Part shown: positions 2,854 through 22,923 of the stretch, piece by piece
How the letters are laid out: each line of letters opens with the position of its first letter
Numbering within the stretch: the stretch's first letter is position 1
From: Diadema antillarum
Lineage: Eukaryota
Reading direction: 5' to 3'
NCBI RefSeq assembly: GCF_040938485.1
Contig: NW_027272364.1
Location: forward strand, 1-64,000
Length of the DNA: 64,000 bases
The notes under the pieces: model-generated
What the model was told of the DNA's origin: nothing
What the model saw: only the letters and a program-made list of their open reading frames with translations
Database searches by the model: none
Made by a program: the position numbers and the translations under genes

Positions 2854-3164
2854 GGAGAATCCCAAATCCAGCGATTGCGACAGAATATCATGCTGATACA
2901 AAGTATATTAAGAGATTTCACTCCCCTTTAACCGCATTTGGTCACCAAACTGCCTTCTATCCCGTTCGCTCGAATTAATCGTTGTTCACAACATTTTAAT
3001 GCTATTGTACGACGGTTTCAATATACAGTAAAACAAAATTCGATGTTTTGTGCTACTATCAAATGCTGATGTGGAACAACTACTAAGTATCCGGCAACTG
3101 CAATTGATATATCCTCACTGGACAGCACTAAAAATAAGCAGCATTTTACCCCTCTGATTCACAG

Positions 3165-3369
3165 ATGGATGAAACCACCGCTAAAGGGTGTTGTGGTGAT
3201 TCTGATAGTGGCATCGGAGAGAGCGTCGCTCCATCGCTATCGTCATCGTCATCGTCATCGTCATCACATGCCCACGGAACGGGATATTATAATGGCTCCA
3301 GATCCTCGACATCGGGTGTCTCTTCCCATCACTACAACTCGACGTTGACATCTGGCACCGGCCATCAAG
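3165..3369 (+). CDS. Gene A first coding exon: MDETTAKGCCGDSDSGIGES plus Ser/Gly/His-rich repeat 1
   Basis: Pyrimidine-rich acceptor CTCTGATTCACAG directly before the ATG. Open frame ends at donor CAAG|GTAAGG in phase 1. The 3' half is homologous to the next two exons. Confidence 0.7.
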
Positions 3370-4224
3370 GTAAGGGGACCTCAACTCCTACGATAGTACA
3401 CAAAAAGAAGGATTGAGGAACCATCCATGGATCGCTTGGTCGTAAGCTATGACGAACAAGTGCTTAAACAGTGCATCAAATACTTCGATACCTAAGCAAT
3501 TAAGTTTGAAAATACGAAAAGAAGGAAAAATATGTCCGTATTCTTCTAAATAGAAAGTGAAACTTATAGTTACGTTTGATCGCAAAGTGTTTTGGACCGA
3601 TTCACACTGAATGTATCAGATTTTAATAGGATAAGCTTTATAATGGATGAATATAGGGAATATAGATGAAGACTATTTCAGTTGCTTGTAGAATAAAAAC
3701 AGCATGCATTAATCGTCTAAAATCAAGTTGGTTTTTATTTTTCCAGTGTATTCTTGTCGGCAATGTGTAAACTTAACCATAAATTATCAAACAGAACTCC
3801 AGATCATATACCATGCTGTTCATGCCAAACAGTTTATAATTTACAGAGGACAGAAATTTTCAGGCACACTTTCCTCCTTTTTTTATCGAAAAAGATCAAG
3901 AATTAAGATGGAGTTGATTTCAGTTGTTTGTAGAATAAAACATCATACATTAGTAGAGAAAAAAAAAAACAAGAAGAGAAGAAAAATGCAAGAAAAGAAA
4001 CGAAGGCAGGATACCCGAAAATTTCTGTGCTCTGTGAATAAACTGTTGGTATTGACAGCATGATACATTTCTTGAATTCAGTTCTCCTATTATAGATGAT
4101 ATGATTTTACCAACACGCGGATACTACTACTAGTATATGATATAGTTTTATAAATACGTGTATGGATGTTTTATAGCGGCAGGCCTGTAAGGATATTACG
4201 GATTCCTCTCCTGGTCTCATATAG

Positions 4225-4443
4225 GGAATTATAGACGGACTGGTAATGTACCAAATGGCTGTTTCGGAAGTCGATACTGGGAATCCCAATTTGCAGCAAA
4301 CCAGACAGTTGGCATCGGTCCATCTGCATCGTCATCGTTATCACATGACCACAGAACGGGACGACATAATGAAGCCAGATCTTCGACATCGGGGGTCTCC
4401 TCTTATGCTTCGAATTCGACGTTTACACCTGGCAAAGGCCAAG
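4225..4443 (+). CDS. Gene A exon: Ser-rich repeat 2 (GNYRRTGNVPNGCFGSRYWESQF...TPGKGQG)
   Basis: Acceptor TCTCATATAG, donor CAAG|GTAAGT. 219 nt, phase 1-1, no stop in the spliced frame. Confidence 0.7.
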
Positions 4444-4838
4444 GTAAGTCTTACTGAATGGAGAGCACTCGACTGAAACTCTTCCCTTTCTATAGGCTCT
4501 TGAACGATCCTTACATGGACTACGACTAGGACCCTACACATGATGATATCGCAAACCTTTCTCCCTCACGAAAGGGGTTGACTTCTAAACCGTTACTTGG
4601 TGGTATAAGCTCTGACGGATACGCGTTCATTGGTTCTTTTAACTGTTTGAGTATTGCATTGAAATTAATCCCTAGACAGTAATGGAATACGTATCTTGAT
4701 GCACGTTTACAAAATTGGAAACATCGAATGGTTTCAACTCTAAAAATCACGCGAAAGAGAGAAATACATGTATATTGTATTTGACCTCTTTTGCGAGGGA
4801 GCACAAGATACCGAAAAGAGGATCATTATGCAATGCAG

Positions 4839-5912
4839 CGTGTCACACCTTTCCGGGCAAGCTACGCGGGCTTGTGGCGAGGAGGTAGTTTCCAGCACGT
4901 AGATTTTCCGCGGGCGAAGAAGAATGTTTGCCATGTTCGCACTTGTTTCTTACCTACTAGACGCGTGCTACTTAGCTTCTACTTGCGTGCGTTCCGTGTG
5001 ACCTGCGTGAGAGCTTTGAAATCGATCCGTTTTCTGTTACGAGCGACTTATGGGTACTGAGAAGTACCTGCGTTGGAGTTGCCTGCGAGGTGCTGCCGGT
5101 AAGAGTCTCCTACTGGTGTTCTGCGTACACCTCTGCGAGCTAACCCCCACGAGTCACTCGGAACAAGTTTTGATTATGCTCAAGGCCTTGTCATACTGTA
5201 TCTGGGGAAGTTTTGCCGCTTGACTTGCGGGCAAACAAATTTGCTACCCGGAGCTCTCCCCAGTTGGTCCGCTCCTGACAGTACCTAGTGCGTATCTCGC
5301 CTGTAGTTGCCCGGAGGCGCTCACGCAAGTCCGATTTAACCGCAGAATTTTAAGCATGACCAAAACCTTTTCCGGGTAAGTCGCGGGGGTGCCCGGAGAG
5401 GTCCACGCAGAGCGCCAGCAGGAGGCCCTTAGCGGCAGCGCTTCGCAGGCAACTCCCACGCAGGTACTTCGCAGCCCCCGTATGCAGCCAAGATAATGAC
5501 ATTCCGTGGGACTTTTGCCATTCCTTCAGAGGAATTCCTTCACTGAGTTGTCAGCCCCCACGCGACTGGTACAAAGGTCACACAGTATACCCGCAAGTAG
5601 AATTTAAGAAGAACGCGTCCAGCAAGTAACACACATGCACTGACTCGCCCAAATCCTTGTTCGCCCTCAGAAATTGTCCGGTATGCTGGAAAATCCCTTC
5701 ACGCAACAAGCCTGCGTAGCTTGCCTGGAAAGGTGTGACGGGGCCTAAACATGGTTGCGGGTAAAAATATTTGCGTGCACACCTCCGGATGACTACGGGT
5801 GAGATACGTGCTTGGTACTGTCATGTGCGGCTCATTCTGGGGACCTCCGGGTAGTAAAAACTGTTCTTTGCAAGTCGAACGCAAGGCTTGCCCGGAAAGG
5901 TGTGACACGGCC
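4839..5912. mobile_element. PIF/Harbinger-like non-autonomous element
   Basis: Left TIR CGTGTCACACCTTTCCGGGCAAGC. Two right TIR copies end GGGGCC|TAA (5745) and CACGGCC|TTA (5912). GGCC termini next to TWA fit Harbinger, but the left end is degenerate. Confidence 0.6.
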
Positions 5913-6320
5913 TTAAGGCCCAACAGTTTATAATTTACAGTGGACAGAAATTTTCAGGCACCCTATTAGTACCCCTTTTTCTATCGGAAACGATTAAGAT
6001 TAAGACGAAATTTATTTCAGTTGTTTGTAGAATAAAACATCAAACATTAGTAGAGCAAAATAAAAAAGAAGAAGAAGAAATAAATGCAAGAAAGAAACAA
6101 AGGCAGGATACCCGAAAATTCCGTGTTCTGTAAATAAACTGTTGGTATTGACAGCATGATACATTTCTTGAATTCTGTTCTCCTATTATAGATGATATAA
6201 TTTTACCAACACGCGGATACTACTACTAGTATATGATATAGTTTTATAAATACGTGTATGGATGTTTTATAGCGGCAGACCTGTAAGGATATTACGGATT
6301 CCTCTCCTGGTCTCATATAG

Positions 6321-6539
6321 GGAATTATAGACGGACTGGTAATGTGCCAAATGGCTGTTTCGGAAGTCGATATTGGGAATCCCAATTTGCAGCAAATCAG
6401 ACAGTTGGCATCTGTTCATCTGCATCGTCATCGTTATCACATGACCACAGAACGGGACGACATAATGAAGCCAGATCTTCGACATCGGGGGTCTTCTCTT
6501 ATGCTTCGAATTCGACGTTTACACCTGGCAAAGGCCAAG
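6321..6539 (+). CDS. Gene A exon: Ser-rich repeat 3 (duplicate of 4225-4443)
   Basis: Same splice sites, 219 nt, open frame, a few substitutions. It overlaps tracked ORF 6344-6553. Confidence 0.65.
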
Positions 6540-7418
6540 GTAAGTCTGACTGAAACTCATCTCCTTCTTAACTAATAAATAAAGAAATGTGTTGCATGAA
6601 CGATTGCATGGTGAAGTGAAAGAGGGAGAAATGTTTACTATAACACTATGTTCACGTAGTCCTCACAGGGATCATTGCTGGGCAAGAGAAGAGTCTAGAA
6701 AGGGGAGAGTTGAGGAGGGAAGCGACATAGGGAGAGTGTATTAAAGGAAGGCAAATAGTGACAAGTGTATGGGGAGCACTCAACTCTCCCCTTTCTAGGC
6801 TCTTGAACGATCCTTACATGCATGGACTACGACTGAGTGGCCTTCACATGGTGCTCCCGCAAACCTTTCTCCCGCATGAAAGGAGTGACTTCTAAACCGT
6901 TACTTGGTGGTATAAGCTCTTACGGATACGCGCTCATTGGTTCTTTTAACTGTTTGAGTATTGCATTGAAATCACTCCCTAGACAATAATGGAATACGTA
7001 TCTTGATGCACGTTTACAAAATTGGAAACATCAAATGGTTTCAACTCTAAAAATCACGCGAAAGAGAGAACTACGTGTATATTATATTTGACCTCTTTTG
7101 CAAGGTAGCACAAGATAACGAAAAGAGGATCATTTGCAGCAAGTTTCTTGCTTACTTGGAGAGCGATCGAACAACTGTTTCAGCACTTTTAAACTCAGGT
7201 GGCAGCGAGTTTGATATTTCACATTCTAGATTTGATATTCGATATTCGGATATTTACGCAAAGCGCATAGTCTGTGTACCAAAAACAATTTAAAGCAACA
7301 CTGTATAGATTTGCTTTTTCTGATTATAGTATATTAAATGTATACTGCTTTAGCTTTGTTCTGTCATGATCAAACGGTTGTGATGAGCTCAGTTTCTCTC
7401 TTTTTCTCTTACCGACAG

Positions 7419-7727
7419 GAGCCTGCTCAGTTCCACTACCAGATTTACCAGGCATCAGCATGATTAACGTTTTCTTGAATGATGGGACGACTGACCACAA
7501 GATTTCCATTGACCGGGAAAGGACGGTACGCGAATTGCGAACCTGTGTACAGGAGAGAACCAGTGTTCGTCCAAATGAACAGCACCTGAGTGTCGACGTC
7601 ATTGAAGGGCCCAATCGTGTTCGCACACGAGTCCTGGAAGCGTGTGACGACACTAGCTCTCTGCAGGACTGTAGGATCGTACACCGCTCACGGATCAACA
7701 TGAGAGTAGCTAACAGCGGGACCGCTG
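7419..7727 (+). CDS. Gene A exon: divergent ubiquitin-like (beta-grasp) domain 1
   Basis: Strong acceptor TTTCTCTCTTTTTCTCTTACCGACAG and donor G|GTATGT. 309 nt, phase 1-1. INVFLNDG..HKISID...TVRELR..VQERT.V.P.EQHL and SLQDC.I follow the ubiquitin pattern. Confidence 0.75.
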
Positions 7728-8041
7728 GTATGTTATGTTGTGCTATAAACAAAAACAAAAACAAAAACAACCCCCACCAAAAAGCAAACAAACAAACAAA
7801 CAAACAAACATACCAGTGCCTAGAAAATGTTCCATGTTTTTAATCCCCCCCCAAAAAAAAAACAAACAAACAAACAAACAAACAAACAAACAAAAAAACC
7901 GGCGAGGAAAGTATTTTTATAGCGAAGAACGTTTAGAGTTGCAAATTCCAAGTCCTATTGCAACTGGACTTCTGGTGTGTATTTATCCATATCATGACAA
8001 ACCCGCAAGTGGTAAGTGTACATGGATGCAAGGGTATATGA

Positions 8042-8175
8042 NNNNNNNNNNNNNNNNNNNNNNNNNNNNNNNNNNNNNNNNNNNNNNNNNNNNNNNNNNN
8101 NNNNNNNNNNNNNNNNNNNNNNNNNNNNNNNNNNNNNNNNNNNNNNNNNNNNNNNNNNNNNNNNNNNNNNNNNNN
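8042..8175. other. Assembly gap (N run)
   Basis: Run of N. Confidence 1.
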
Positions 8176-8456
8176 TTTCAACTCTTGCGCTTTTCCGAAA
8201 AGGAGGAAAGAGGAATTATGATGTGAAAGTTACACACCGATTTCTCCTTCCTTTTTCATATCTCACATATGCAAAATTATTCAGGAGAACCCAAAAAGCT
8301 GTTGTAGCGGTGACTTCTTACGCAAAATATTATCCCAATTCATTCACCGGTACGTGAATCTTAGAAGATCCAGCTGAGGCACGCAGCTGGTAGTTATTCA
8401 TAACTCTCTGCTCCCACCCCCCCCCCCCAAAAAAAAAGGAATATGCGCATAATGAC

Positions 8457-8760
8457 GTCTCCGTGGCTGAGCGGTTAAGGCGTTGGGGTTCCATGCCAAA
8501 GACCATGGTTCGATTCCCGATGGAGACCAAGTTTTCAACTCTTGCGCTTTCCGAATGGAGGACCAGTAACAGGAATAATGATGTGAAAGTTACGCACCGA
8601 TTTCTCCTTTCTTTCTCATATCTCACATTATACACATGGTGATTCTATCCCACAATGGAGAGTGCTCGATGTCCTCATGGTATAGAGCTTTTGACAGCAG
8701 AAGTAATGAAACAAGTTCATTGACTGCAGGTTCATCAGTATTTATTGCAACTCTGAGTTT
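8457..8760 (+). mobile_element. tRNA-derived SINE or tRNA pseudogene head (8457-8528) plus body
   Basis: 7-bp acceptor stem GTCTCCG/TGGAGAC, A box TGGCTGAGCGG, B box GGTTCGATTCC. The T stem and anticodon stem are imperfect. The body is repeated at 8176-8270. Confidence 0.55.
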
Positions 8761-8761
8761 C

Positions 8762-8923
8762 NNNNNNNNNNNNNNNNNNNNNNNNNNNNNNNNNNNNNNN
8801 NNNNNNNNNNNNNNNNNNNNNNNNNNNNNNNNNNNNNNNNNNNNNNNNNNNNNNNNNNNNNNNNNNNNNNNNNNNNNNNNNNNNNNNNNNNNNNNNNNNN
8901 NNNNNNNNNNNNNNNNNNNNNNN
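8762..8923. other. Assembly gap (N run)
   Basis: Run of N. Confidence 1.
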
Positions 8924-9076
8924 TTCTGTAAAGTGGGGGGGGGGGGAGGGCGTGACTAATATTTCTGGTGCCACTTCCGGGTTTCATTTCATTTTTTCTT
9001 TTTTTTTCTTTTGTTTTTGTTTTGAACTTAAAATAAAGGGAGGCGTGCGCCGGTTGCGCCCCCTCTGGATAAGCCA

Positions 9077-9115
<39 letters not shown>

Positions 9116-9855
9116 CTGTAAGTGTCCAAAGCCGTAAAAAAGACGGGTGACACGTTGAAAATTTGTTGGACAATATATTTGATAATGAATTACTATCTTT
9201 TCTTTCATCTTATATATATATATATATATGATATATTTATATATTCATTCATTTATTCATAATGTAAATGTATATATATATATTTATATGCACCTGTATT
9301 ATATTAATTATCACAATCACGTTCTGTTTTCAAGAAATGCTGTACTCTTCAACATTTTAGAGTCGATCGATTTGTTTTGAGAATAATTACATTTTGCTGT
9401 TTTGGCACATTTTAACGTGCATCTAAATCTCAGGTGCTCATTTGAAAAGTCCGTCATTGAAGGAATGATTATTGTTCTATAGTGTACCCTACTGTACTAA
9501 GTATATCCTACTCTAATGCTGCCCGCAAAAATATAAGTTCTGCCCAACTCTATAGCCTCCTTCGCCGTAGTTTTCTTGGCTGTAACGTGCACAAGCAACC
9601 GCTCATAGTGACAGTCCTGCATAATTTCTTGGTTGATTATTTGTAAATTTGGCAATACAAAAATAACAATACAAATCTTATTCATGAAATTAATGTACAC
9701 ATTTACTTTCTTTCTTCGAACGATTTACATTGTAATTCGTGTATCGATGTTTTCTGTGACATTACTGAAAAGAAATTTGATTTATGTATGAAATGATGTT
9801 GAAGGAAGTAAAATGAAACAAAATACTGAAGGGGTGATCTCATATCTTTTCTAAG

Positions 9856-10157
9856 GAACCTTGGGAAACACCTCAGGCAGAGCAAATGGGCGCCCAAAGA
9901 CCGCAGAGCTGGTACGGAACACGTTCCAGGTGTTCGTACAAACACCTGGAGGGAAGATCATTACCATTGACACGTGTAGTGAGGACACAATCGGTGTGCT
10001 CAAGAGAAAGATTCAAGCGAAAACCTGTGACGCGCCCAGACAGCAGACCTTGACACACGCCGGAAAACCACTGGCCAAGGACTCGGCAACTCTGCAACAC
10101 AACAAAATTGGAAAGCAGTCCTTCATAGCCATGAATATCCGCCTCGTATCAGGTTGA
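9856..10157 (+). CDS. Gene A terminal exon: ubiquitin-like domain 2 ending RLVSG-stop
   Basis: Acceptor TCTTTTCTAAG in phase 1. FQVFVQTPGGKIITIDTCSEDTI..LKRKIQAKT..P.QQ.LT.AGK is ubiquitin-like and paralogous to the UBL exons at 28015, 41242 and 52515. Confidence 0.85.
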
Positions 10158-10629
10158 ACCTCTGAACGTACTTGCGAATAGCTCATAGTTATGTAGACTT
10201 AGGATGCATGCACCTCTAAACTTTCTTACGAAAAGCTCACATTATCATAGACATTCTTTTTGCCAAACTTTGAACGCTATCAACCGAAGCATATATTTGT
10301 ATATAGGGCTCCAATCAGCTCGTCAGAGTTGGTCACGTCTGCCACGTTCAGGAGAACGGTGTGTTTTCTGTCACGGTGACGAGATCCGCCCAATCTGCAC
10401 AATAATCGTCACACGAATTCAAGTCAAATCGCTAGATAATAATAATAACGATCATAATAATACTAATGATTTTAGTTGCTCAACATGTAAAGGTTAATAC
10501 ATATATATGCATGTTCAAACATGAAAGCAGAGAAGAACAATAATGGCAAACAACAAACACATAACCGATAAAGAATACATTTGTTCCAAACATTATAGAC
10601 TGCAATTATAGTACTCAGTGTGAGAGGAA

Positions 10630-10840
10630 CAGAACGTTTTAAGTTTGGATTTGGATGTTTCTGTAGATGACAGTTGCCTTAACTGAATGATTCCACAATT
10701 TTGGTCCCATAACGGACAAAGCACGATACCCTATCCATGTTTTACGCTGGGTGTTTTGAGTAACAATGCATCTGATAATGAACGTTAACTTCATGTCGAA
10801 TTGTACTTGGAAATAGAGTCACAGGTCTACGAGGGAAAAA
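10630..10840 (-). mobile_element. L2/CR1-type LINE 3' remnant
   Basis: The minus strand of 10690-10731 encodes GYRALSVMGPKLWN, resembling the L2 ORF2 C-terminal G.RAFS..AP.LWN motif. Confidence 0.5.
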
Positions 10841-12824
10841 GAATGAACTGAATGATATACTAATAACAGAATATTATTAATATCTAGATCAATATCAATA
10901 TCACCATCCACCCATTCTGCGCATAGTTGCTATACCAATCAAGCACAAATAAATTGGTAGATAGGATGATTAATGAAGTAATCATACAATATACCTTTTC
11001 TTCTGGATTAATTTCAAGCGATGTGTTTTCGAAACGAATCAAATTTAAGTCATTCCTGTGGACTGTGGTACAAATTATTAAGTTATTTCAGACAACCACT
11101 AACCATAGAGCCTACCCCTCCCTTGTTCGACATTGCAGTCACTATCATAATATATGTTGATACTCTTACTGAGGTCCATGTTCTTGAATGTGTTTATGCA
11201 GAAATAATTATGTGCGCTGATAAACTCGTCATACTGTCCTAAACAAAATGTTCTTAACTTTGAAGACAATAGTACCCATGGTTTATCCTTATTCGCCAGT
11301 AAAGTTTTTGAAAAGTAACCAAAATATAGCTGCAAATTTAGTAACACGTAATGCAAAAGGTAATAAATGGTGAATTTGGTATATAGTTGTGTGAAAACTA
11401 AAACTGATTTTAAATCAATGATCTATGTTTGATTTTTTTTAATATGGTTAAGATTCTATATACTAAATAATTCTGTAAATAGACGTAATTGAAATGAAAT
11501 CTTGATCATAATTATTATCCATTTAGCAACTGTTAAGATACAGTATATAAATACTATACTATGCGACTTTCTCGGAGACTCGGGTAGGTAATTTTTCTGT
11601 GTGTCATGTATTGATTGTGTATGGTACATCAGGCGTTACAGTGTTCAATTAAGAATGCACAAGCAAGGCATGATTCTTGATATAGAAAATGTTGACTTTA
11701 ATTCATACATTAAATGTTGTTACGGCCTTGTGCCCGCGATTCTAATATCAACCGTGGTCTATTCCATTCGAAAGAGTCTTTCATACTGTTATTTTTTCTT
11801 TTACGTTCTAGAAACCATTGAGGTATTTTTTTTTTTTTTTGGCAGGTTTTCCTTGTTATAGTAGAACTCTTTGGTCGTACAGGTGGTTTCATGGTATATA
11901 CCATGTATTCCCTCTTGGAGGTGAGAATGGTCTTGAAAAAGACCTAAAGAGACCTACTCAATCGCGACGTTCTAGTAAGCAGGTAAGCATGTTCACACGG
12001 AAACGTCGAGCTTGAGTAGGTCCTTTTCAAGACCACACTTAATATATCTAACGTTAGGCAGGGAGGTGTGAGAGATGGAGATACAACTACTGCTCTCCTT
12101 TGAAGTCATGCGCGGCACCGCCGAGAAGTTATGCACATAACTGCAGGTGGGAACCAGGCGCTTTGACAAAAGAGAGCATCAATAATCGGGACTAGGGCTC
12201 TCACACCAAGAAAGACTCCCCCCTACTGCAGTTCGCTCTCTCTTTGAATGTGATGGCAACAATGAATTTAGATTATTTTGTGTGCCCTGGATGATTGGAG
12301 CAGCGAATCAAATGCAGTGTAAAATCGACAATTTTAACAGTAAAAAGTTTAAAGGCACGCTGGAACACGCTTTAGCAGAGGACTTTATTTGGAAGATCAA
12401 AATATCCCAGAATGAAAGATTAAAAAAATAACATGCGCAAATGTGCACATCATAGAAGCATATTAGGTTTTAAAGAGGACCTAGTTTTCATTTCATGTCG
12501 ATTTGCGCATTACGAAGAAACTTAGAAATATATGTTTATGATATTGAATTCTTTCCTTAACTCTTCTCAATCTATTCGAGCATTTCACTTCAGATTTTAC
12601 GGTGAAAATAGCTCGTAATTCGATGAAAAGTGAAATGCATTCGTTGTCTCCAAACTTCGTCTTGCAACTAGAGAGGTGCCGAGCATGGCTTAAAAGCGTA
12701 GTGGAATATTAGACATCCCATTGAACCCAAGCATGTGTTTGTATGAGTTATGAAGTGTTGCCACTCCATCTATGTAACACATCCCTGATCTAGGTTGTCA
12801 CTGTCATTGTTATTGTCATATATA

Positions 12825-13211
12825 GGTGGAGGTGTCGTGGCTGAGTGGATAAGAGCGCTCGTCTGTGAACAACATGAGCGTGGTATGGTTCGTGGGTTCG
12901 AGCCCATGCCAAGCCCGACACGTTTGCCCTTCAGCAAGGCACTTTATCCACATTGCTGCTCTCCACCCAGGAGTATAAATGGGTACCCGGTAGGATGAGA
13001 AAGCTTATGTTGGTTGATCAGCATGTCCGCACCTGGAAAATGGCTGCGACTGGCTGGAATGCTCCCCAGGGAGTGGAGAATGAGCACTGTCAGTGCTGGT
13101 TGGAAATAATGTATCCAGTGACCGGGGTAATAATAGTCTGTAAAGCGCATTGAAACCCTGAAGTGTGTGAAATGCGCTATATAAAAACCAGCTATTATTA
13201 TTATTATTATT
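12825..13211 (+). mobile_element. Full-length tRNA-derived SINE
   Basis: A box TGGCTGAGTGG and B box GGTTCGAGCCC. Central GCAAGGCACTTT...CCACCCAGGAGTATAAATGGGTACC is typical of conserved-core SINE superfamilies. L2-like tail TAAAGCGCATTG...AATGCGCTATATAAA is followed by (TAT)n. Confidence 0.85.
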
Positions 13212-16200
13212 AAGGTCCATCGTGAAACCACCTATAATACCATAAGAAACCATTCAGCTTTCATGAATATACGACAGTTTAATGAGTGTTCAAAAGCTGT
13301 GGTTTTGTCTTTTCGTCTTTTTGTCTTTTCATATTTTAATGTTGCTAAATAGAATCACTCAAGCGCCTCGACTATCGTGCCCATCGGGCAATATATTGTA
13401 ATAACCTTGCTAGATCATGGTTAATGTCGAGGATGAAAAGTTTGGAAAAGAAAGGACAATGTACATATCAGCTTTCCTCCTGTCGAATAACTAGTGATGA
13501 AAGAAAATTGTAACCATTTTGTTCTAAAAGTGAAAAGGCAAATCATCTTTCCTTTATGAGTTTCCTTTTACATCTGCTCGGCTCTGCTTATGATAATGGT
13601 CTCGTGCTTTCCTATATTAGAGATTTGCTAAATTTCGTCTTGAACAGCAGGTATATACGTAAAATCTTTTTTTCATCGTGCGTAAAGTGACACACGCTCG
13701 TCTTCATTTTGCATTATCAAGAAAGACAATTCTGTACATTTAAGTCAATCATTTGCCTGTTTCCATGTATTTCCTCCGTTCAAATATTACTCAATAACTT
13801 TACTTTGTGTTGATAATCGACGTGAAATCAAGTATTAAATCTCAGATAAAGATAAAATAAAAACAGTGTAATATAACATTAATTGGATCGTTTTATACGA
13901 CGTAACTCCTTTTGTGTAGAGTACATGTACTAATGCGAGGTAATGGTTTGTATGTGTGATAAAATGTGAAGGTATGTGACCGTTTGCATGCGTTTTTGCA
14001 TGCCTGAATGATGACTGTTTGACTTATTCACATCTCGCTTTCGAATGCACTGAATATTTGTGATTCCCCAGTTTAGCTCTTTTAGGGCAAGAAGTGATAC
14101 TGAAGAGCTGTATACGACTTCGTAGAAGCTTCATCAAAATCGGACTTAAAGATGAGAAAGATGTGAGAAAATTTGTTCTGTTTTCACAGAATAATAGCCA
14201 TGGTTCTAATCACAATACTACTAAGAAGTTGAAGTAATTATGTTATGGATCTACAATTTAACTGTTTCATTGGTCTGCGCCGTAGAATATCCTATACAAA
14301 TTCATGTTTTGGTGGTTAAGTTATAAAGCAATTACAATTAATTCTATCCCATAAAAACTCTAATCGCAAGGATAAACTACGGCATTTACATGATACGTAG
14401 TGTAATCGTATACTGTATAGACACATGACTCTCGTTGTAGGCCTTCAACATGAGACATATTCAGACGCTAACATTTTATATCGTACATTTCAATAATGTC
14501 TCGAGATTAACCGGGAGGTAGTCATATTCACTCAACGGCTTCACGTCTTCTCCTTTAAAGAAAAGTAAAGGTCGTCAAATTGTTTCTCAGTGGGGAATTC
14601 CACACCCGTGTCAGATTGTGTTTGATAACGGAGTACAAGTTTAAACAATAGACTGCGTGATTAGAGGATGAAAAACAGGCAAGGCAAACACCACTGTCAT
14701 AATTTTGTTGCATTACTGCCGAATTTAACAGATAAAAGGTGGAGCTTTTAAACCACACACGTACAAATAAACAAACACACACACACGCACACGCAGATAC
14801 AATAGAATAATGAATAGAACAGGAAAAGGGAGAGAAGGGGCGTTAACTATAGAGAGAGAAATAAAAAGAGGAGAGAAAAAGAGAAATCAAGCACGGAAAA
14901 AATTGCAGTATTGTTCCTGTTATAGGACTCCATTTGTATTGTAATTTAAGATTTTATTGATCAGAGAAAAAAACACTTTCTCAATTTTCAAATTTAATAT
15001 CACACACATTACATAATAATCAATCTTGATGATATCGATACTAATATGGTCTTATTATCTGATCGAGTTTTTGTACTAACTAATAGCATGCAAAATCATA
15101 CACTGAAAAATCTAGGGAAAGAACTTCACTAGTAATAGGTTATACAAAACACACCAAAAGCATAAACTATATACATAATTTTACTGTAAAGGAATGAACA
15201 CGTAGATTAAGGGAATGTTTAATCATTAAAAGGCGCTTTCCAGGCTTCTGCATTTGAACACCTATAATATATATACTGGATTCAGAGTTTCAAAATTTGT
15301 AGTGATTGGAATGAGGGATACAAATGTTTTCAAAATTCCTAACAAATCACAATGAGAATGCATAATTCTACACGGGTGAAATTGTTAAGCAAGTGGTATT
15401 GTAATGGAATACATTGCTACATTACTGGAATAATTACGTGGGCCTCCTATGTCATCATCCTTTTTCAGTGTATAATGTTTTTGGTTTTTTTTATTTGTTT
15501 ATCTACTCAAGGACCACAATAAATTCCATAAATCTATACATGGCACTATCGATTTATGTACTACATGATGTGAAATTATATAAATCGTCTGGAACATTCC
15601 GTAATCTTATGAAGGAGGAACAGGAATAATTCAACAGGTTTTTTAATGCTTTAGCAATAGCCTGTGTGTTTTTTTTTCAGTGGGGAAGAGGTTACCAGCC
15701 CTGGGTTTAACCCCCTGCGTGCCAAATATAATTGCCTGTTCATAAGTTTGTGTGCAGATTTTGTGCACATTTGACTCATTGGCATGAAAACAGTTAAGGT
15801 CTTCATTCTCCTATTCTTTATACGTCAAGCCGTATAAGATGATGGTGATGTATATATCTAGTGTCTGGATGGCTGACGGATAATATGTGGAAATCAGGAA
15901 ATATTTCAGCTAAGTGAATAGACGGGGCAACGAGAAAAAGAAATATATAACATATCATGTAAGTCATGACAAAATTGTTATCATCATGACATGTTTGCAT
16001 CATTAGCCATTCAATGATCACATAAAATGGAAAAAAAAAGTGAATGGAGCTATCTATAGTGTTCCTTGAACTGGCTTAATAACCCATAATATAGATTGAA
16101 AACGCCCTTTTAATACCATGGCCGAATGTGGCATCAAGTACCGTTATAACGTCGTTGTGACGCTTTACACGACACTCCATGCATATAGACAGCGTCAAAC

Positions 16201-16933
16201 AACAAAGCCGACCAGCGGGGAATACCAAGGTTTAAAGGGAAGTTCACTCAATAATCATATTAATGAGCAAAAACGAAAAACTTTACTCAAACAAGGAAAA
16301 CAAGACATGTTGAATTTCTTTTGAAACATTTTGAAGTTTTATACATGGTGTCACGAAAGATTCCCATAGGAATGAGAATCGTATCATATAAGGCGATGGC
16401 GTCACAGCAGCACCATTCCCCTAAGATTGCCATATGTGATAGAACTCCACCCCAGGTTTCTAATCACTAATCCATCAACTACTAGTATAAGTACAGTATT
16501 TACAGCTCTATAGTGATCTGATGGAAAGGATGTAATATCTCCTTGCTGGGTTATTTTAAACTTGAAAATTTAGGGAAGATTTATGAAGACTTTGGTGAGG
16601 TAATGATCGACAATCATCATCATCTCAGCAAGATTGTATGTGTGATTGTGATTGCTTTGTGTAATTGTCGTGAAACTTTTGATTTTGATGTATCTATTGA
16701 AGTCAACTTGAAAAGTAGAGGAATCTCTCTCGAACACAAACACACCATGCTGTGCCTATATAAACATTGTCACAGTATCAAGCGACGAAGGCAAAGTCTA
16801 TCTAGTCCAGTCAAAATAGGGTTTCACCCACCACTAATTGCAACAGTACGAATTCCACTGCAGTGCAACTTGTTATGGGCTCCTAAACACCACACTAAAA
16901 GTCCCAAGAAATCCAATGGGGTAAAGTGGCTAA

Positions 16934-17441
16934 ATTTGCATAATATGCAAATTAGCTCCCATAATGATAAAAATACAGTGTTTCCATGAAAACTATGCTT
17001 CTAGGTTTCAGATTGGAAAACCGAAAGTGTTTTAACGTATGTTTACAATGTCAGCTAGTGCGATGCAAACATTTCCATGGACATGATCTGGGCCTCATTT
17101 GCATAATATGCAAATTAGCTCCCCATAATGATAAAAATACAGTGTTTCCATGAAAACTATGCTTCTAGGTTTCAGATTGAAACACCGAAAGTGTTGAAAC
17201 TTATGTTTTCAATGTAAGTTGTGCGATGCAAACATTTCCATGTACATATTCTGGGCCTCATTTGCATAATATGCAAATTAGCTCCAATAATGATTAAAAT
17301 ACAGTGTTTCCATGAAAACTATGCTTCTAGGTTTCAGATTGGAACACCGAAAGTGTTGAAACATATGTTTGCAATGTCACTTAGTGCGATGCAAACAATT
17401 CCATGAACATAATCTGGGCCTCATTTGCATAATATGCAAAG
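16934..17441 (+). repeat. 163-bp tandem repeat (3 copies plus a partial)
   Basis: ATTTGCATAATATGCAAA recurs at 16934, 17097, 17260 and 17423. Confidence 0.9.
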
Positions 17442-18149
17442 GGTACCGAGCCAACGGAATATTCAAATGCACCAAAGTGCCCGATATGAGCATATCAAGA
17501 GTGTTCAAATGTGACATGTCAGTTTCTCTTCACCAAAAACAAACTTTTCAGCATTAGAAACCTAGCATGAATAATTTTAAGCGAATAATAATTTGTTATC
17601 AGAAAGATAATGATAGCTTATCCACTAATTACGGAGAATCAAATAATATAAACAACTGTCAACATCTATAACTTGTCCAATTTTGTAATTAATGAACTCT
17701 ATTTGGAGAGGTGCTTATTCGAATCTGGATGATTCAGCTCTTGCACCCTTGAGGGTTTTGAGATATTGAAGATAGCACAGTCAAAGGAAACTCTGTGGGT
17801 AGTGACCAAAGTTACCCCTATCGATCATATCCCCACGGCCATTTGCAAAACATGCATCAACCAACGCGATTTCCGTTGTTCTAAGCGTACAAGATTTTTT
17901 TTAAAAGTCGTTTGGCCGTCTAGCAAAGACTATTTCCATGAAAGTATATCTTTAAAAAGTGGTGCACATGAGTCAAAGCGACTCGGAGGGAGGTACCCGA
18001 ATTTATCCCTATACCCTCACAGCCCGGTACAAAACACAGTATATACACATGAATACACCCTCTCTAACGTCCTTTTCGTTTCATTTCCATTAAATTTCAG
18101 TGGAAGTTATAGAAGAATTATTGTTCTACAATATCTCAAGGGCAATTCC

Positions 18150-18870
18150 GCAGTTAGTAACGTTACATTTGAACAAATTTAGATATTTGTTTTTACTACT
18201 AAATTACAATTTATTCATTTCAAGCCAAAATTATGTCAAAAACATGTTCATCATTCCCAGGTTTATGATACAGAAAAGAATGAATACAATCCAAGAAATA
18301 ATAGCATTGCTATGGCAACTTAAAGGGCTGGTTAGTAACGTTACGAAAAAAGGACATGACAAAAAAATCAATGTCTTGTAACAAAAAGTGTGCAAAAATT
18401 CAAGTTACTTCAAACAAAGTTTTGCATTAATTTCAATTATTACAAATGTTCACACAATGTTTTTTAGCAGTTCGACCAATAATTTCTTAGCTAGACCCCC
18501 AAAAGCATGGTTAGTAACGTTACGGTTAGTAACGTTACATTTGTCCGGAGAAATTCCGCAGGTCATTTCACCCTTTTGTAATTGACAAAATGTCACATGA
18601 CTTCTGGAGTATTTAAATGTATTTATCTTTTACCCTTTAGCAAAACTTTGAGGAAAAAATTTCAAAGGAACCCACTGTAATTTGCATTTAAGTGAATTTC
18701 AGCATCCCCAGTCCCACATGTACATTTTAAATGATGGTTTTAGATCTCGCGAAATCAATCAATACGAAAGATAAAATCTACTGAATTTGAAAGACCTTAA
18801 TAATTGGTGAACATCCGTGGCATTAGTTGATACCTAGATTAAAGAGTAATATAAAGAGGCACATTTCTTT
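18150..18870. repeat. Dispersed repeat with an inverted copy at about 61620-63315
   Basis: The reverse complement aligns by eye with 61626-62245 and 63180-63315. It contains several GTAACGTTAC palindromes. Confidence 0.75.
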
Positions 18871-19029
18871 CATCCATGTCATGTCCACCTAACTGCGGAA
18901 TTGCCCATAAGATGAAAAGGTGAAATCCTAAAGGCAATGAAAAACATGTTCCATGGGTACATGCCTCTGAAAAGTTCTTCCGCCTGTCTAGCACATACTC
19001 TTTTATTTTCGTAAAATGCAATTCAGGTA

Positions 19030-21360
19030 ATGCAGGAGACGTTGCTTTACAATATCTATATTGTCAAAAAGTTGGACATTCAAACGCAAGCCCTTGGGAA
19101 GTGCCCAAATCACCCATACCTTGACCTTCGTAGTCCCAAAACAGGTTAACAAAACATGCATTATATGCCAAAGCAAATTCAGTTGTACATGCACGTAGAA
19201 AGTCGTTTTGCCGGGTTGTAAATAAAAACACTTTACTTTTCATGATTTTTGAATGGTAGAGACACTGCTTTACAATATTCATATAGTCAAAGGGGTGCAC
19301 ACTCAAAGGCCACCGAGTGGGATGTGTTCAAATCATCCAACCCCCAGGGCAATATAGGAAACATGCATACTCATTTAGCACGAATATGTTCCAATTTTCC
19401 AACGGTTGTACAGCAAGTGCCCTATTGTTTTCAAGAAATGCAATATAATTAAAAGAAGAAAAAATTGCTCTACCTTAACTTTATTGTCAAAAGGGTGAAC
19501 ATTTCAAAGCAATCCCTTGGGAAGTGTTCAAAATTACACCTCCTCTCAAGCCCCGTAATTACAACACACGGATACTATGAACGCAAATACTGACGTTCTT
19601 TGGTACATGGTTTTAGAAGTAGTTCCGGCAATACAGCTACACACTTTTATATCGATGAATGTCGTGGAAATGATAGAAGAAGCATTGCTTCACAATATCT
19701 ATTCAGTGAGAGGATGCACATTAAATTCCAATCCAGTAATTGTGCCCCAAAGTACCCCACCCTCACGGCAATATAGAAAACATCGAATATCATTAACGCG
19801 AATATACTATATGTTCCAAACGTACATGTTTCAAACTTCGATCATGCCATGCAGCATGGGCACTTTTGTTTTCAAAAATACATTGCAGTTAATAGAGGAG
19901 ACATCCCTTAACGATATCCATATTCTCAAAAGGGTGAACATTAAAGGACAATCCCTTGGGAATGGTCCAAAATTACACCTACGCTCACGCACCCTTAAGA
20001 CAAAACACAGATATTAGCAACGCAAACACCGTTGTTCTAGCGTGGATGGTTTTAAAAGTAGTCCCGGCAATACAGCGAATACACTATTTATCAATGAAAA
20101 GTCATGGAAATGATAGAAGAGGCTGAACCTTACCAGATCTATACAGTGAAGAGGATGCACATTAAATGGTAACCCTGTGGGATGTGCCAAAAATATTCAA
20201 CCCTCACGGCAACTTAGAAAACATATAATATCATAAAACGCGAATATATATTTTCCAAACGTACATGTTTTCAAAATTCCATCGTGCTGAATAGCAAAGG
20301 CACCTTTGTTTCCAAGAAATGCAACTAATTAATGGAGGAGACATTGCTCTACAATAACTATATTGTCAAAAGGGTGAACATTCAAAAGTAATCCCTTGGG
20401 AAGTGTCCAAATTCACATCTACGCTCACGCCGCCTTATTACAAAACACAGATATTAGCAACGCAAATACCGTTGTTCTAGCATGAATGGTTGTAAAAGTA
20501 GTTCCGGCAATATATCAAATACAATTTTCATCGATGACAAGTTATGAAAATGATAGAAGAAACTTGAATTTACAAGATCTATACACTTAAGAGGGTGCGC
20601 ATCAAACGGCAACCCTGTGGGATGTGCCAAAAATACTCCACCCTCACGGCAATATAGAAAACATATAATATCATATAACGCGAATATATATATGTTCCAA
20701 ACGTACATGTTTTCGAAATTCCATCGTGCCGTATAGCAAAGGCACTTTTGTTTCCCAAAAAAATGCAACTAATTAGTAGAGGAAACATTGCTCTACAATA
20801 ACTACATTGTCAAAAAGGTGGACATCCAAAGGTAATCCCTGGGGAGGTGTCTAAATTTACACCTACGCTCACGCCCTTTATGACAATATACGGATATCAG
20901 CAACGCAAATGCAGTTGTTCTAGCGTGAATGGTTTTAAATGTAGGTCCAGCAATACAGCAAATACACTCTTATATAAATGAAAAGTCATGAATATGATAG
21001 AAGAAGATTTGCTTTACAAGATCTACACAATAAAAAGGGTGCTTATTGAAGGGCGACCCTGTGGCGTGTGCCCCCGAAATGCCCTTTATCCTCTTGGCAA
21101 TATGGAAAACATAATATCATATAACGCGAATATATATGTTCCAAAAGTACATACTGTCAAAATTCGATCGTGCCTTACAGCAAGGGTATTTTTGTTTTTA
21201 AGAAATGCAATGTAATCAATACAGGAGACATTGCTTTACAATACTTATATAGTTAAAAGTGATGCACATTTAAAGCGGCCCCTTGGGAGGCGCCCAAAGT
21301 TACCCCCTCAACCCCGCGTCCCCATATGCAAAACGTGCATTATGCCAACGTGAGTACTGT
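19030..21360 (+). repeat. About 440-bp degenerate tandem repeat (5-6 copies), each made of two related halves
   Basis: AAAAGGGTGAACATT-like anchor near 19066, 19488, 19929, 20368, 20813 and 21255. Confidence 0.8.
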
Positions 21361-22923
21361 TGTTATGAATTTACTCTTACAGTTACCGCTAATTTGCATT
21401 TTATGTAAATTATTTTTGTACGACCAATTCGAAAAGGCATCTATCGTGTTCATTGACCTACAAAATATAAGTTTATACATTTAAATCTTTAAAATTGGAT
21501 AACGGGAAGCTGAGATCTGTCAATTTCCTCTCATTTCAGGTGCTAATTTGCATATTATGCAAATTTTACTATTTTGCCCCGCTGGATTTTTTGGGACTTT
21601 TAGTATGGTGTTCAGGAGGCCTCAACGACTTGCTCTGCAGTAAAATTCCTACTGTTGCAATTAGTGGTGGGTTACCCCCTAAAAATCGCTAGATTGACTG
21701 GACTAATCTGGGTGTTGTGATTGTTTACCGAAAAAGAATGAATCCATTGCGACACTCAAACATGCCAAAGCTGTATGTTTCTACAGATTGATATAAACAA
21801 CGACGATATTGCGCAAAAACACTTATGACGTCATCGGCCTTGATTACTGAACCATTAACATTCAGTTAAACTTTTTGGAATGTTTCCTCTTTTCCGCTAA
21901 AGGGTGCGTGGGGGACAAGAATATATCTCATGTGATGGTCATGAGGTCGAGAATTTATCACTTTGAGGGATAATTGAATGGACCCTGGCCTTGCAGGCGA
22001 AAAAAACTGAATAAAGAAAAAGATATTCTGCAGATTACCAGGGGAGAGCAAGGTAGGAATGATTGTCCGTATTTGTCTTTTGAGTGCTTGAGAGTTGTGA
22101 CCATGCACTCCCAGCCTGGTGAATCTAGGTCACCTTGTGAGAAATATTGGACACGCATACATGATGTATGTATGTGTGTATGCATAAAGAATCTATGTAT
22201 GCATAAATGCATGAAAATACTCCAGTATGAAAAACCGAATTTGTCTAGAATTTCTCTGGCTGGCCTGATGACTTGACCATTTTCATTGACAGCTCTCATC
22301 CATGCAGTGAGACATACATTGTTCCTTCGCAATAACACGCAAACTTGGAAAAGTGCAATTTGTCATTGTTGTCTTTAAAGTTCATGTGCTCAGTCTTGCA
22401 TGACATTCATCAACATAATTAGGCATCAATGGAAAGGAGAAGAGTTCTCCTTTCCTCACAACTAACATTGCGCTCTCTATAGCTGACAATTTTTAAATAA
22501 GTAGCCCTCGAAAGTTGGATTACCTTTTTTTTTCATACTCACTGTAAAACCACACCATGTTTAAACTCCATAAAAAGCAATAGCACTTATAAATGTAAAA
22601 ACTGAGAGTTTAATTCTAGTGGAGTTGGCGTGAGTACTGTCTTGCACGTGAAAAGAGGTCTACCCTATACTTCATTTATAAACAACCCGTTTCGGGGGAA
22701 AAAAGTATAGATATTCGAAGCTGCCAGTTGTAGGCATTACGGAGTTAGTGTATACGATTAACAGATGTGCAATATCAATGCAACATTATCACGTCTGGAG
22801 TTTAAAAAAAAAGTGTGTGTGTATGGGGGGGGGGGATTGGTAGCTACGGGGTACATGAACTTTGTGCATGCAAGGGTATTTTAAGCAGAGAAATTATACT
22901 TATTAACATGATAAACAATAAGC

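What the first reader, a model, noticed from the sequence alone, without database searches (positions are those of the whole stretch)
3165..10157. Upstream UBL-UBL gene whose terminal UBL is a GG-less paralog of the RING genes' UBL
Seen: five exons splice in frame (205+219+219+309+302 nt, 417 aa) into a Ser-rich N-terminus plus two UBLs. The last exon shares FQVFVQ..GK..TIDTCS.DTI...RKIQAKT and the ANGR linker with the RING genes but ends RLVSG-stop with no tail, and it retains an AGK (K48-like) motif. Established: ISG15 and FAT10 are di-UBL immune modifiers that need a terminal GG. Inference: this is either a non-conjugatable decoy or regulator of the RING-RING-UBL proteins, or a modifier using a single terminal Gly. 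Two N gaps may hide further exons.
Basis: partly seen in the sequence, partly recalled or inferred. Interest (0 to 1): 0.7.

Follow-up and report, generated by a model that had tools for sequence, protein, structure and literature searches.

The report
Sea-urchin double ubiquitin-like gene without GG
A long-spined sea urchin (Diadema) gene encodes two ubiquitin-like domains, and the usual Gly-Gly attachment end was replaced by Val-Ser-Gly-stop before two Diadema species split, so the protein probably works by binding rather than by being welded onto targets; this is untested.

Summary
Five GT-AG exons (3165-3369, 4225-4443, 6321-6539, 7419-7727, 9856-10157) join in frame. They give a Ser-rich, probably disordered N-terminus plus two beta-grasp (UBL) domains, ending RLVSG-stop.

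The genome is Diadema antillarum. NCBI annotates only exons 4-5 here (182 aa, 'polyubiquitin-like'), using an acceptor 21 nt further down.

- **Closest relatives.** These are not the RING genes' UBLs (49-54% identity). They are di-UBL paralogues elsewhere in the genome (75%) that end RLRGG plus an 8-residue tail.
- **How the end changed.** The stop is a Cys codon (TGC) turned TGA directly after the Gly76-equivalent. R74 became V and G75 became S. The old tail is still readable behind the stop.
- **Conservation.** The D. setosum orthologue (331 aa, one copy of the duplicated exon) ends RLVAG-stop, so the loss predates the species split. Both genes are intact.
- **Rates.** Exon 1 and UBL1 are conserved. 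UBL2 changes three to four times faster, but never at ubiquitin core positions.

Most likely this is a retained, non-conjugatable di-UBL protein, as mammalian OASL is relative to bird OASL. Decay of UBL2 and a single-Gly modifier remain open. No RNA evidence could be obtained. Other notes of this scan cover the neighbouring RING-RING-UBL genes on this same window, not this gene.

The parts
3165..3369 (+). Exon 1: start codon and Ser-rich N-terminus (68 codons + 1 nt); carries a DSGIGES motif at 3204-3224
   Evidence: donor AAG|gtaagg. 64 of 66 aligned residues are identical to the D. setosum orthologue P0007. The same N-terminus opens all full-length family members.
4225..4443 (+). Exon 2: Ser-rich repeat, 219 nt, phase 1. 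An alternative in-frame acceptor lies at 4296/4297.
   Evidence: Homologous to exon 2 of P0007, P0001 and P0005.
4839..5909 (.). High-copy transposon-like insert with perfect 24-bp terminal inverted repeats, lying at the junction of the two duplicated exon-2 units
   Evidence: Inverted repeats 4839-4862 / 5886-5909. Word depth is about 1000 times that of the flanks in three DNA runs.
6321..6539 (+). Exon 3: tandem duplicate of exon 2 (6 nt and 3 aa differences), with identical splice sites
   Evidence: Duplicated units 3824-4832 and 5918-7138 are 89-93% identical. The D. setosum orthologue model has only one copy.
7419..7727 (+). Exon 4: short linker plus UBL1, a divergent beta-grasp that ends ANSGTAG with no Gly-Gly; Met at 7460 is the start of NCBI's model
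   Evidence: Pfam ubiquitin 20.2 bits, TBK1_ULD 22.8 bits, both below threshold. AF2 residues 1-83 have pLDDT 74-92. Foldseek aligns both domains to di-ubiquitin and ISG15.
8042..8175 (.). Assembly gap 1, inside intron 4 (not read, not filled)
   Evidence: It is flanked by repeat sequence.
8457..8528 (+). tRNA-Gly(TCC)-like sequence inside a high-copy repeat in intron 4 (probable tRNA-derived SINE)
   Evidence: ARAGORN. Depth 9,000-22,000 in bin 8400-8599.
8762..8923 (.). Assembly gap 2, inside intron 4 (not read, not filled)
9856..10157 (+). Exon 5: ANGR linker plus UBL2, ending RLVSG-TGA.
   Evidence: Pfam ubiquitin 6.8e-13. AF2 residues 105-180 have pLDDT 83-91.
10146..10157 (+). Altered conjugation tail: GTA TCA GGT TGA (V-S-G-stop), where the paralogues read CGA GGA GGT TGC (R-G-G-C)
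   Evidence: 5 of these 9 a-priori sites differ, hypergeometric p = 0.0017.
10158..10181 (+). Relic of the ancestral pro-peptide tail (TSERTCE + TAG) behind the new stop; 24 of 24 nt identical to the paralogues
   Evidence: probability of no difference about 0.04. No SECIS element downstream.

Best explanation
This is an intact member of a small di-UBL gene family found only in Diadema. The layout is a Ser-rich unstructured N-terminus, UBL1, a roughly 20-residue linker, then UBL2. The ancestral form, kept by the paralogues, ends RLRGG plus an 8-residue pro-peptide, which is the layout of a modifier that is processed and then conjugated. In this gene's lineage three things happened before D. 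antillarum and D. setosum split. The Cys codon right after the second Gly became TGA, Arg74 became Val, and Gly75 became Ala (later Ser in D. antillarum). The protein therefore ends in a free single Gly at the Gly76-equivalent, without the di-glycine that ubiquitin-type E1 enzymes need. The gene was then kept. Exon 1 and UBL1 are under purifying selection. UBL2 keeps every fold-determining core residue, while its surface has changed fast, above all the Leu8 loop, the beta-5 face and the tail. The most likely working mode (inferred) is non-covalent. The protein would bind partners that recognise its GG-bearing relatives or the neighbouring RING-RING-UBL proteins, such as E1/E2, processing proteases or receptors. 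It would act as a regulator or competitor and would not itself be attached. Shown: anatomy, homology, the exact mutations, their age, intactness and rate heterogeneity. Inferred: loss of conjugation, binding partners, and any immune role.
For: Exons and frames. Organism and existing models: P0008 (NCBI 'polyubiquitin-like', D. antillarum) matches the window's exon 4 and 5 pieces exactly. GG-type paralogues P0001, P0005 and P0006 end RLRGG plus tail. Codon-level comparison of the terminus. Orthologue P0007 (D. setosum) ends RLVAG-stop and is full length. Conservation against P0007: exon 1 has 2 substitutions in 66 residues and the UBL1 exon 4 in 102, against 13 in 99 for the UBL2 exon (Fisher p = 0.0055). 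UBL2 domain: 12 of 77 residues differ, against 3 of 77 in the GG pair P0005/P0006 (p = 0.027). None of the 12 lies at a ubiquitin core position. The exon 5 N:S ratio differs from exon 4 of the same gene pair (pN/pS 1.49 against 0.29, Fisher p = 0.008). The densest clusters of nucleotide change are the Leu8 loop and codons 74-77. Both domains fold as beta-grasps and align to linear di-ubiquitin, ISG15 and the chicken OASL tandem UBL. A decaying family member for contrast, C104/C1311, has a TAA in one allele and a UBL1 branch nine times longer. Literature: the di-glycine is essential for E1 activation (10.1101/831503); Leu8, the Ile44 patch, Arg42, Arg72 and Arg74 contact UBA1 (PMC12355090); mammalian OASL tandem UBLs lack LRLRGG and are thought to act by binding, whereas bird OASLs keep it and form conjugates (PMC8764230).
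Against: There is no transcript evidence for any junction; the runs found were DNA. NCBI's RNA-seq-informed pipeline annotated only exons 4-5 here. UBL2 evolves at about the neutral rate: pN/pS is 1.3-1.6 and not significantly different from 1, which fits plain relaxation as well as re-specialisation. The two haplotigs are identical here, so there are no polymorphism data. No partner is known. The E1 requirement is extrapolated from ubiquitin.
Confidence: 0.5

Rival explanations
1. Partial decay. The gene, or at least UBL2, is losing function. The nonsense change and the loss of RGG were disabling hits, and UBL2 now drifts. It is a young unitary pseudogene, or a gene whose only working parts are the N-terminus and UBL1.
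For: UBL2 pN/pS is 1.3-1.6 against its paralogues, not different from 1. It has four times more replacements between species than the GG pair. The upstream acceptor of exon 5 is weakened (AAG where a paralogue has CAG). Exon duplication and a transposon insertion sit in the 5' half. NCBI annotates a truncated model. A sister-like copy (C104/C1311) is visibly decaying.
Against: The ORF is intact over all exons in two species despite the age of the terminus change. Exon 1 and UBL1 are strongly conserved between species (6 changes in 168 residues). None of the 12 orthologue differences, and only one of the 20-24 paralogue differences, in UBL2 falls on the 19 ubiquitin core positions. Exon 5 (88% nt identity to the paralogues) is still better conserved than the flanking introns (69-81%).
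Confidence: 0.25
2. A modifier that is still conjugated. The stop directly after the Gly76-equivalent produces a ready-made free C-terminal Gly, so no processing is needed, as in FAT10. The V-S/A-G tail would be charged by a dedicated or tolerant E1, as single-Gly ends are in UFM1, ATG8 and ATG12.
For: The stop falls exactly at the mature-end position and the terminal Gly is kept in both species. Arg72 and Leu73 are kept. The changes cluster in the tail and the Leu8 loop, the two elements that E1 and proteases grip, as expected for a change of specificity. Lys48 is kept and a Lys63 is gained.
Against: In ubiquitin the di-glycine is essential for E1 activation (10.1101/831503). Position 75 is itself unstable, Ala against Ser between the species, which is odd for a recognition element. 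The known single-Gly UBLs use non-canonical E1s and belong to other UBL families (own knowledge). No candidate E1 was sought here.
Confidence: 0.12
3. A different gene model. In D. antillarum the functional product is only the 182-aa di-UBL that starts at Met 7460 (NCBI's model). Exons 1-3 are then relics or belong to a separate or alternative transcript.
For: NCBI's pipeline had 12 RNA-seq runs (PMC13511894) and produced full-length models for the paralogues but a short one here. Duplication and a transposon disturb the 5' part.
Against: Exon 1 is 64/66 identical to the orthologue's and opens the D. setosum full-length model. Exons 1-3 are open and in phase, with intact GT-AG sites. Gene predictors often truncate models at repeats.
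Confidence: 0.25
4. The TGA is decoded as selenocysteine or read through, so the protein continues into the conserved TSERTCE tail.
For: The TGA aligns with a Cys codon in the paralogues, and the next 24 nt are identical to theirs up to the same TAG.
Against: No SECIS or other matching RNA family was found in 9800-14000 even at E up to 10. The base after TGA is A, not the leaky C context (own knowledge). Gnomon ends both species' models at this stop.
Confidence: 0.02

Closest known systems
OASL tandem UBL domain (mammalian without LRLRGG, avian with it)
   Same: Two tandem beta-grasp domains; the chicken OASL structure 7sbi is among the fold matches. Within one homologous family, some members keep LRLRGG plus a short pro-peptide and form conjugates. 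Others lack it and are thought to act by binding (PMC8764230).
   Different: There is no OAS domain; the N-terminus here is a Ser-rich unstructured region. There is no sequence relationship beyond the ubiquitin fold. The GG and GG-less forms coexist as paralogues in one genome instead of in different classes of animals.
ISG15
   Same: Di-UBL layout. The GG-type paralogues end LRGG plus a pro-peptide, like the ISG15 precursor. ISG15 structures align over both domains.
   Different: Only 18-20% identity in the fold alignments, against 26-27% to di-ubiquitin. This gene lacks the GG. It has an N-terminal extension of about 130-210 residues and a disordered inter-domain linker of about 20 residues. 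Found only in Diadema; interferon or immune regulation is unknown.
FAT10
   Same: Di-UBL made with a free C-terminus that needs no processing.
   Different: FAT10 ends Gly-Gly and is conjugated through UBA6. Here the end is Ser-Gly or Ala-Gly. No homology beyond the fold.
Ubiquitin / linear di-ubiquitin
   Same: UBL2 is closest by sequence to ubiquitin itself (E about 1e-9 to single ubiquitin chains; 42% identity to the genome's own polyubiquitin). Lys11, 27, 29, 33, 48 and 63 and Arg72-Leu73 are present.
   Different: Leu8, Ile44, His68 and Val70 are replaced by Pro, Thr, Ala and Asn. Arg74 and Gly75 are replaced by Val and Ser. UBL1 has no detectable sequence match in the PDB.
Non-conjugated UBLs such as Hub1/UBL5 (own knowledge)
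   Same: Ubiquitin-fold proteins without Gly-Gly that act non-covalently.
   Different: Those are ancient, conserved, single-domain proteins. This is a young, lineage-specific derivative of a GG-type paralogue.

Membership tests
Ubiquitin family (Pfam PF00240) | Profile match above the curated cut-off | tested here: met
   UBL2 (exon 5): 48.6 bits against 25.4, positions 1-71 of 72. UBL1 (exon 4) alone scores 20.2 bits, below the cut-off.
Ubiquitin family (beta-grasp fold) | Both domains adopt the beta-beta-alpha-beta-beta-(3-10)-beta fold | tested here: met
   AF2 model of P0008: pLDDT 79.6, domains 1-83 and 105-180. At least 500 PDB matches at E <= 0.001, led by linear di-ubiquitin, ISG15 and the OASL tandem UBL.
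Conjugatable (type I) ubiquitin-like modifier | C-terminal Gly-Gly, exposed or followed by a cleavable tail | tested here: not met
   Ends V-S-G-stop; the orthologue ends V-A-G-stop. Paralogues P0001, P0005 and P0006 do meet it (RLRGG + 8 residues).
Conjugatable (type I) ubiquitin-like modifier | Charged by an E1 and found in isopeptide conjugates | not testable with these tools
   Needs biochemistry.
ISG15 | Two tandem UBLs with nothing else | tested here: inconclusive
   Two UBLs are present. The homology-supported model adds a Ser-rich N-terminus of roughly 130-210 residues. NCBI's 182-aa model has none.
ISG15 | LRLRGG end | tested here: not met
   Ends IRLVSG.
ISG15 | Orthology to vertebrate ISG15 and induction by interferon or infection | not testable with these tools
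   Searches with exon 4, P0001 and P0008 found relatives only in two Diadema species. No expression data.
Non-conjugatable UBL-domain protein (OASL-like use of a tandem UBL) | Tandem UBL lacking the conjugation motif, yet retained by selection | tested here: inconclusive
   The motif is absent and the ORF is intact in two species. Exon 1 and UBL1 are conserved and the UBL2 core is conserved. The overall UBL2 rate is near neutral.
Pseudogene | Frameshift or internal stop, or lost splice sites | tested here: not met
   None in the five exons nor in the orthologue model. The only 'premature' stop replaces the first residue of a tail that is removed anyway in such precursors.
Selenoprotein | In-frame TGA aligned with Cys in homologues, plus a SECIS element in the 3' UTR | tested here: not met
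   The TGA/Cys alignment is present. No SECIS in 9800-14000 at E up to 10.

The most novel reading that the evidence does not exclude
The loss of RGG is adaptive, not decay. A burst of replacements in the Leu8 loop, the beta-5 face and the tail, together with a stop placed exactly at the mature end, would have made either a ready-made, protease-resistant single-Gly modifier or a dominant 'cap/decoy'. Such a protein would engage the E1, E2 or processing enzymes of the GG-type di-UBLs and of the adjacent RING-RING-UBL ligases. It would evolve under positive selection, perhaps in an immune arms race, which is topical given Diadema's mass die-offs.
Probability: 0.12. Interest if true: 0.75.

Novelty: new variant of a known kind. 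Interest (0 to 1): 0.42.

Why it matters
One genome holds three things side by side. There are conjugation-type di-UBL genes (RLRGG plus pro-peptide). There is a two-species-old derivative whose tail was rewritten and cut off exactly at the mature end. And there are ligase genes carrying the same UBL exon. That is a natural experiment on how a ubiquitin-like modifier turns into a non-covalent UBL-domain protein. It parallels the bird/mammal OASL contrast, but here the mutational steps are still readable: TGC to TGA, and GGA to TCA with GCA inferred as the intermediate from Ala in D. setosum. It would also give a handle on an unstudied UBL system restricted to Diadema, a keystone reef grazer hit by mass mortalities. 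Without expression or biochemical data it remains a well-documented evolutionary case, not a functional discovery.

Tried and rejected
- **RNA evidence.** The look-up of sequencing runs returned three runs of unknown kind. Laid on 4200-10199, their contigs cover introns, so they are DNA.
- **Selenocysteine or read-through at the TGA.** Rejected, because no SECIS element was found.
- **Polymorphism between the two haplotigs.** They are 100% identical over 2,355 nt around exon 5, so this is uninformative.
- **Test for omega above 1 in UBL2.** Not significant (binomial p 0.18-0.30).
- **Relative-rate tests.** They run 3:1 in the expected direction, but p is only 0.04-0.7 depending on the outgroup.
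- **Wider orthologue survey.** The profile-free search of 1.8 billion representatives with exon 4, and two word-index searches with P0001 and P0008, found only Diadema proteins.
- **Full-length fold of the orthologue.** Poor model (pLDDT 39.8). I use it only to say that the N-terminus shows no predicted structure.
- **Joined protein.** The joined five-exon protein was not built or searched. Exons were searched one by one by reference, and NCBI's own models served as joined proxies.
- **N gaps.** The letters under the two gaps were not looked up. Of the automatically fetched haplotig locus L001, only the part matching window 9300-11654 was compared.

Full report
**What is in the sequence.**

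Every junction is GT-AG and every intron is in phase 1. The lengths 205+219+219+309+302 add to 417 codons plus TGA.

- Exons 1-3 encode a Ser-rich, low-complexity stretch with no Pfam match.
- Exon 4 gives sub-threshold ubiquitin-type matches (PF00240 20.2 bits, TBK1_ULD 22.8 bits).
- Exon 5 is a clear ubiquitin-family domain (48.6 bits against a cut-off of 25.4).
- Exon 5 ends IRLVSG-stop and keeps an AGK at the Lys48 position.

I did not build or search the joined five-exon protein. Exons were used one by one by reference, and NCBI's own spliced models served as proxies.

**The N gaps.**

Both gaps (8042-8175, 8762-8923) lie inside intron 4, so no reading frame crosses them. Around them are high-copy repeats, including a tRNA-Gly-like element at 8457-8528.

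Exon 4 and exon 5 have the same order, strand and spacing on the second haplotig of this assembly: 2,107 nt between the two protein matches there against 2,131 nt here. I used coordinates only.

Every homologous gene model joins the UBL1 exon directly to the UBL2 exon, so a hidden coding exon is not expected. I did not read or infer the gap letters. Of the automatically fetched haplotig locus L001, only the part matching window 9300-11654 was compared.

**Whose genome, and what is already annotated.**

The profile-free search with exon 4 and two word-index searches found relatives only in two species, Diadema antillarum and D. setosum.

P0008 is NCBI's 'polyubiquitin-like [D. antillarum]', 182 aa. 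It equals the window's exon 4 from Met 7460 plus exon 5, piece by piece.

A paralogue has a strong CAG at the upstream site where this gene has AAG. The downstream site may therefore be the one really used here.

The assembly size and contig count match the uncollapsed diploid v0.4 assembly, which NCBI annotated with 12 RNA-seq runs (PMC13511894). That explains why contig C277 carries the same locus.

**The family.**

| Type | Proteins | Species | Length | End |
|---|---|---|---|---|
| GG-type di-UBL | P0001, P0005 | D. antillarum (contig C139) | 331 aa | RLRGG + 8-residue tail |
| GG-type di-UBL | P0006 | D. setosum | 328 aa | RLRGG + 8-residue tail |
| GG-less di-UBL | P0008 (this gene) | D. 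antillarum | 182 aa as annotated | RLVSG-stop |
| GG-less di-UBL | P0007 (orthologue) | D. setosum | 331 aa | RLVAG-stop |
| Mono-UBL | P0002, P0009 | D. antillarum, D. setosum | 238, 239 aa | RGG + 8 residues |
| Decaying copy | on contigs C104 / C1311 | D. antillarum | - | not assembled |

- The GG-type genes have the same architecture: the same N-terminus, one Ser-rich second exon, UBL1, linker and UBL2.
- The window's UBL2 is 75% identical to these, but only 49-54% to the UBLs of the three RING-RING-UBL genes downstream.
- The mono-UBL paralogues stop after UBL1.
- The decaying copy has a TAA in one allele and a UBL1 branch nine times longer than this gene's.
- The close RING-RING exon occurs only beside this gene, and no ORF of note lies between 10.2 and 26.3 kb. 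The GG-less gene is therefore the immediate upstream neighbour of that cluster, on the same strand.

**How the end was made.**

The paralogues read CGA GGA GGT TGC at codons 74-77. The window reads GTA TCA GGT TGA. The following 24 nt, seven tail codons and the old TAG, are identical.

The new stop is thus a Cys codon turned TGA directly after the Gly76-equivalent. Arg74 became Val and Gly75 became Ser.

Five of these nine a-priori sites differ (p = 0.0017). The only denser cluster in the exon is the Leu8 loop.

The truncation and the loss of RGG therefore predate the species split. Ala (presumably GCA) is the plausible intermediate between GGA and TCA.

A selenocysteine reading of the TGA was considered, because TGA opposite Cys with a conserved downstream tail is the classic sign. 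I rejected it because no SECIS element was found.

**Is it alive?**

There is no frameshift or internal stop in any exon in either species. Against the orthologue:

| Part | Differences |
|---|---|
| Exon 1 | 2 substitutions in 66 residues, plus a 2-Ser indel |
| UBL1 exon | 4 in 102 |
| UBL2 exon | 13 in 99 |

- The heterogeneity between the UBL2 exon and the rest is significant (Fisher p = 0.0055).
- In the 77-residue UBL2 domain the GG-less pair differs at 12 positions, against 3 in the GG pair P0005/P0006 (p = 0.027).
- Against its paralogues, exon 5 has pN/pS of about 1.5 (30.5 replacement and 6.5 silent differences). This is not significantly above 1, but it differs from exon 4 of the same pair (0.29; Fisher p = 0.008).
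- None of the 12 orthologue differences, and only one of the 20-24 paralogue differences, falls on the 19 positions I took as the buried ubiquitin core. That position list comes from my own knowledge.
- Exon 5 is still better conserved than the flanking introns (88% against 69-81% nt identity).

Changes shared by both GG-less species are L8P, x9G, Q58H, Y59N, Q63K, T66F, V68A, A71I, R74V and G75A/S. Most of these lie on the surface that ubiquitin uses for E1, proteases and receptors (PMC12355090).

My reading: the gene as a whole is under selection. UBL2 is kept as a folded domain, but its canonical interaction surface is either released from constraint or being re-tuned.

**Structure.**

An AF2 model of P0008 with a 10-row family alignment has mean pLDDT 79.6. 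It shows two beta-grasp domains (1-83 and 105-180) and a disordered linker (86-103).

Foldseek aligns both domains to linear di-ubiquitin, ISG15 and the chicken OASL tandem UBL. By sequence UBL2 is closest to ubiquitin itself, and UBL1 has no PDB sequence match.

The full-length orthologue model is poor (pLDDT 39.8) and shows no structure in residues 1-142. That is consistent with, but does not prove, a disordered N-terminus.

**Mechanism and rivals.**

In ubiquitin the di-glycine is essential for E1 activation (10.1101/831503). With Val-Ser-Gly, Pro8 and Thr44, conjugation through a ubiquitin-type E1 is unlikely; this is an inference.

| Reading | Probability |
|---|---|
| Retained, non-conjugatable di-UBL protein acting by binding | about 0.5 |
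| Decay of UBL2 or of the gene | 0.25 |
| Ready-made single-Gly modifier | 0.12 |
| Read-through or selenocysteine | 0.02 |

Separately, I give 0.25 to NCBI's short model being the true product in D. antillarum.

The best precedent for the main reading is OASL. Bird OASLs keep LRLRGG plus a pro-peptide and form conjugates. Mammalian OASLs lack it and are thought to work by binding (PMC8764230).

**What could not be done.**

- No RNA evidence: the runs found were DNA.
So there was no D. setosum DNA, no codon-level test between the species, and no check of synteny there.
- The haplotigs are identical at this gene.

**Verdict.**

This is a neat, datable case of a conjugation-type UBL turning into a GG-less one inside a Diadema-only family. 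The gene is annotated but unstudied, and interest is moderate until expression and biochemistry are known.

Noticed in passing
window 3824-4832 and 5918-7138: Tandem duplication of the exon-2 unit: 89-93% identical overall, and the exons themselves differ by only 6 nt. The second unit carries an extra insert of about 210 nt at 6554-6766. The D. setosum orthologue model has a single copy.
   Followed up: partly
window 4839-5909: Element of about 1.07 kb with perfect 24-bp terminal inverted repeats, lying exactly between the duplicated units. Its word depth is about 1000 times the flanks in three DNA runs, so it is a very high-copy DNA transposon or MITE family.
   Followed up: partly
window 8457-8528: tRNA-Gly(TCC)-like sequence inside a high-copy repeat in intron 4, between the two N gaps. 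Probably a tRNA-derived SINE.
   Followed up: partly
window 3204-3224 (exon 1): The motif DSGIGES (DSGIGDS in the paralogues) is conserved at the N-terminus of every full-length family member and repeated in exon 2 of some. From memory it resembles the beta-TrCP phosphodegron of the DSGxxS / DSGxGDS type. This is a lead only and was not tested.
   Followed up: no
G000:C139:13782-14075 and 768865-769158 (L013, L014; P0002, P0009): Mono-UBL paralogues. The UBL1 exon reads on for a few codons where the others have the intron donor, and the protein ends RGG plus 8 residues. In this branch UBL1 itself therefore carries a conjugation-type end.
   Followed up: partly
G000:C104:7187443-7187748 and G000:C1311:1519-1821 (L016, L015): Another family copy sits at two contig ends, with a TAA inside UBL1 in one allele and a long branch. 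Its UBL1 ends ANSGTAG like the window's gene. Its UBL2 end is not assembled, so whether it had GG is unknown.
   Followed up: partly
G000:C139, about 4-14 kb and about 755-769 kb: Two copies of a mono-UBL plus di-UBL gene pair lie on one contig. The di-UBLs (P0001, P0005) differ by 10% in protein, while the mono-UBL exons are identical in protein. In an uncollapsed diploid assembly this could be a real duplication or a haplotype joined in.
   Followed up: no
window 9846-9877: The acceptor of exon 5 is AAG here, where a paralogue (L004) has CAG. A CAG 21 nt downstream is used by NCBI's model, which removes 7 linker residues in frame.
   Followed up: partly
window 3145-3167: The start ATG is directly preceded by a pyrimidine-rich tract and AG. 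This suggests an upstream non-coding exon and a 5'-UTR intron.
   Followed up: no
window 11905-11949 (-): Sub-threshold match to the histone 3' stem-loop family (23.6 bits against 34, E 0.0023), with no histone ORF nearby. Probably chance.
   Followed up: no
window 49153-52885 versus G000:C277:712685-716062: The third RING-RING-UBL copy differs strongly between the two haplotigs (about 83% nt identity around the UBL exon), while copies 1 and 2 are 99.3-99.8% identical. This is either structural or allelic divergence, or non-allelic copies.
   Followed up: no
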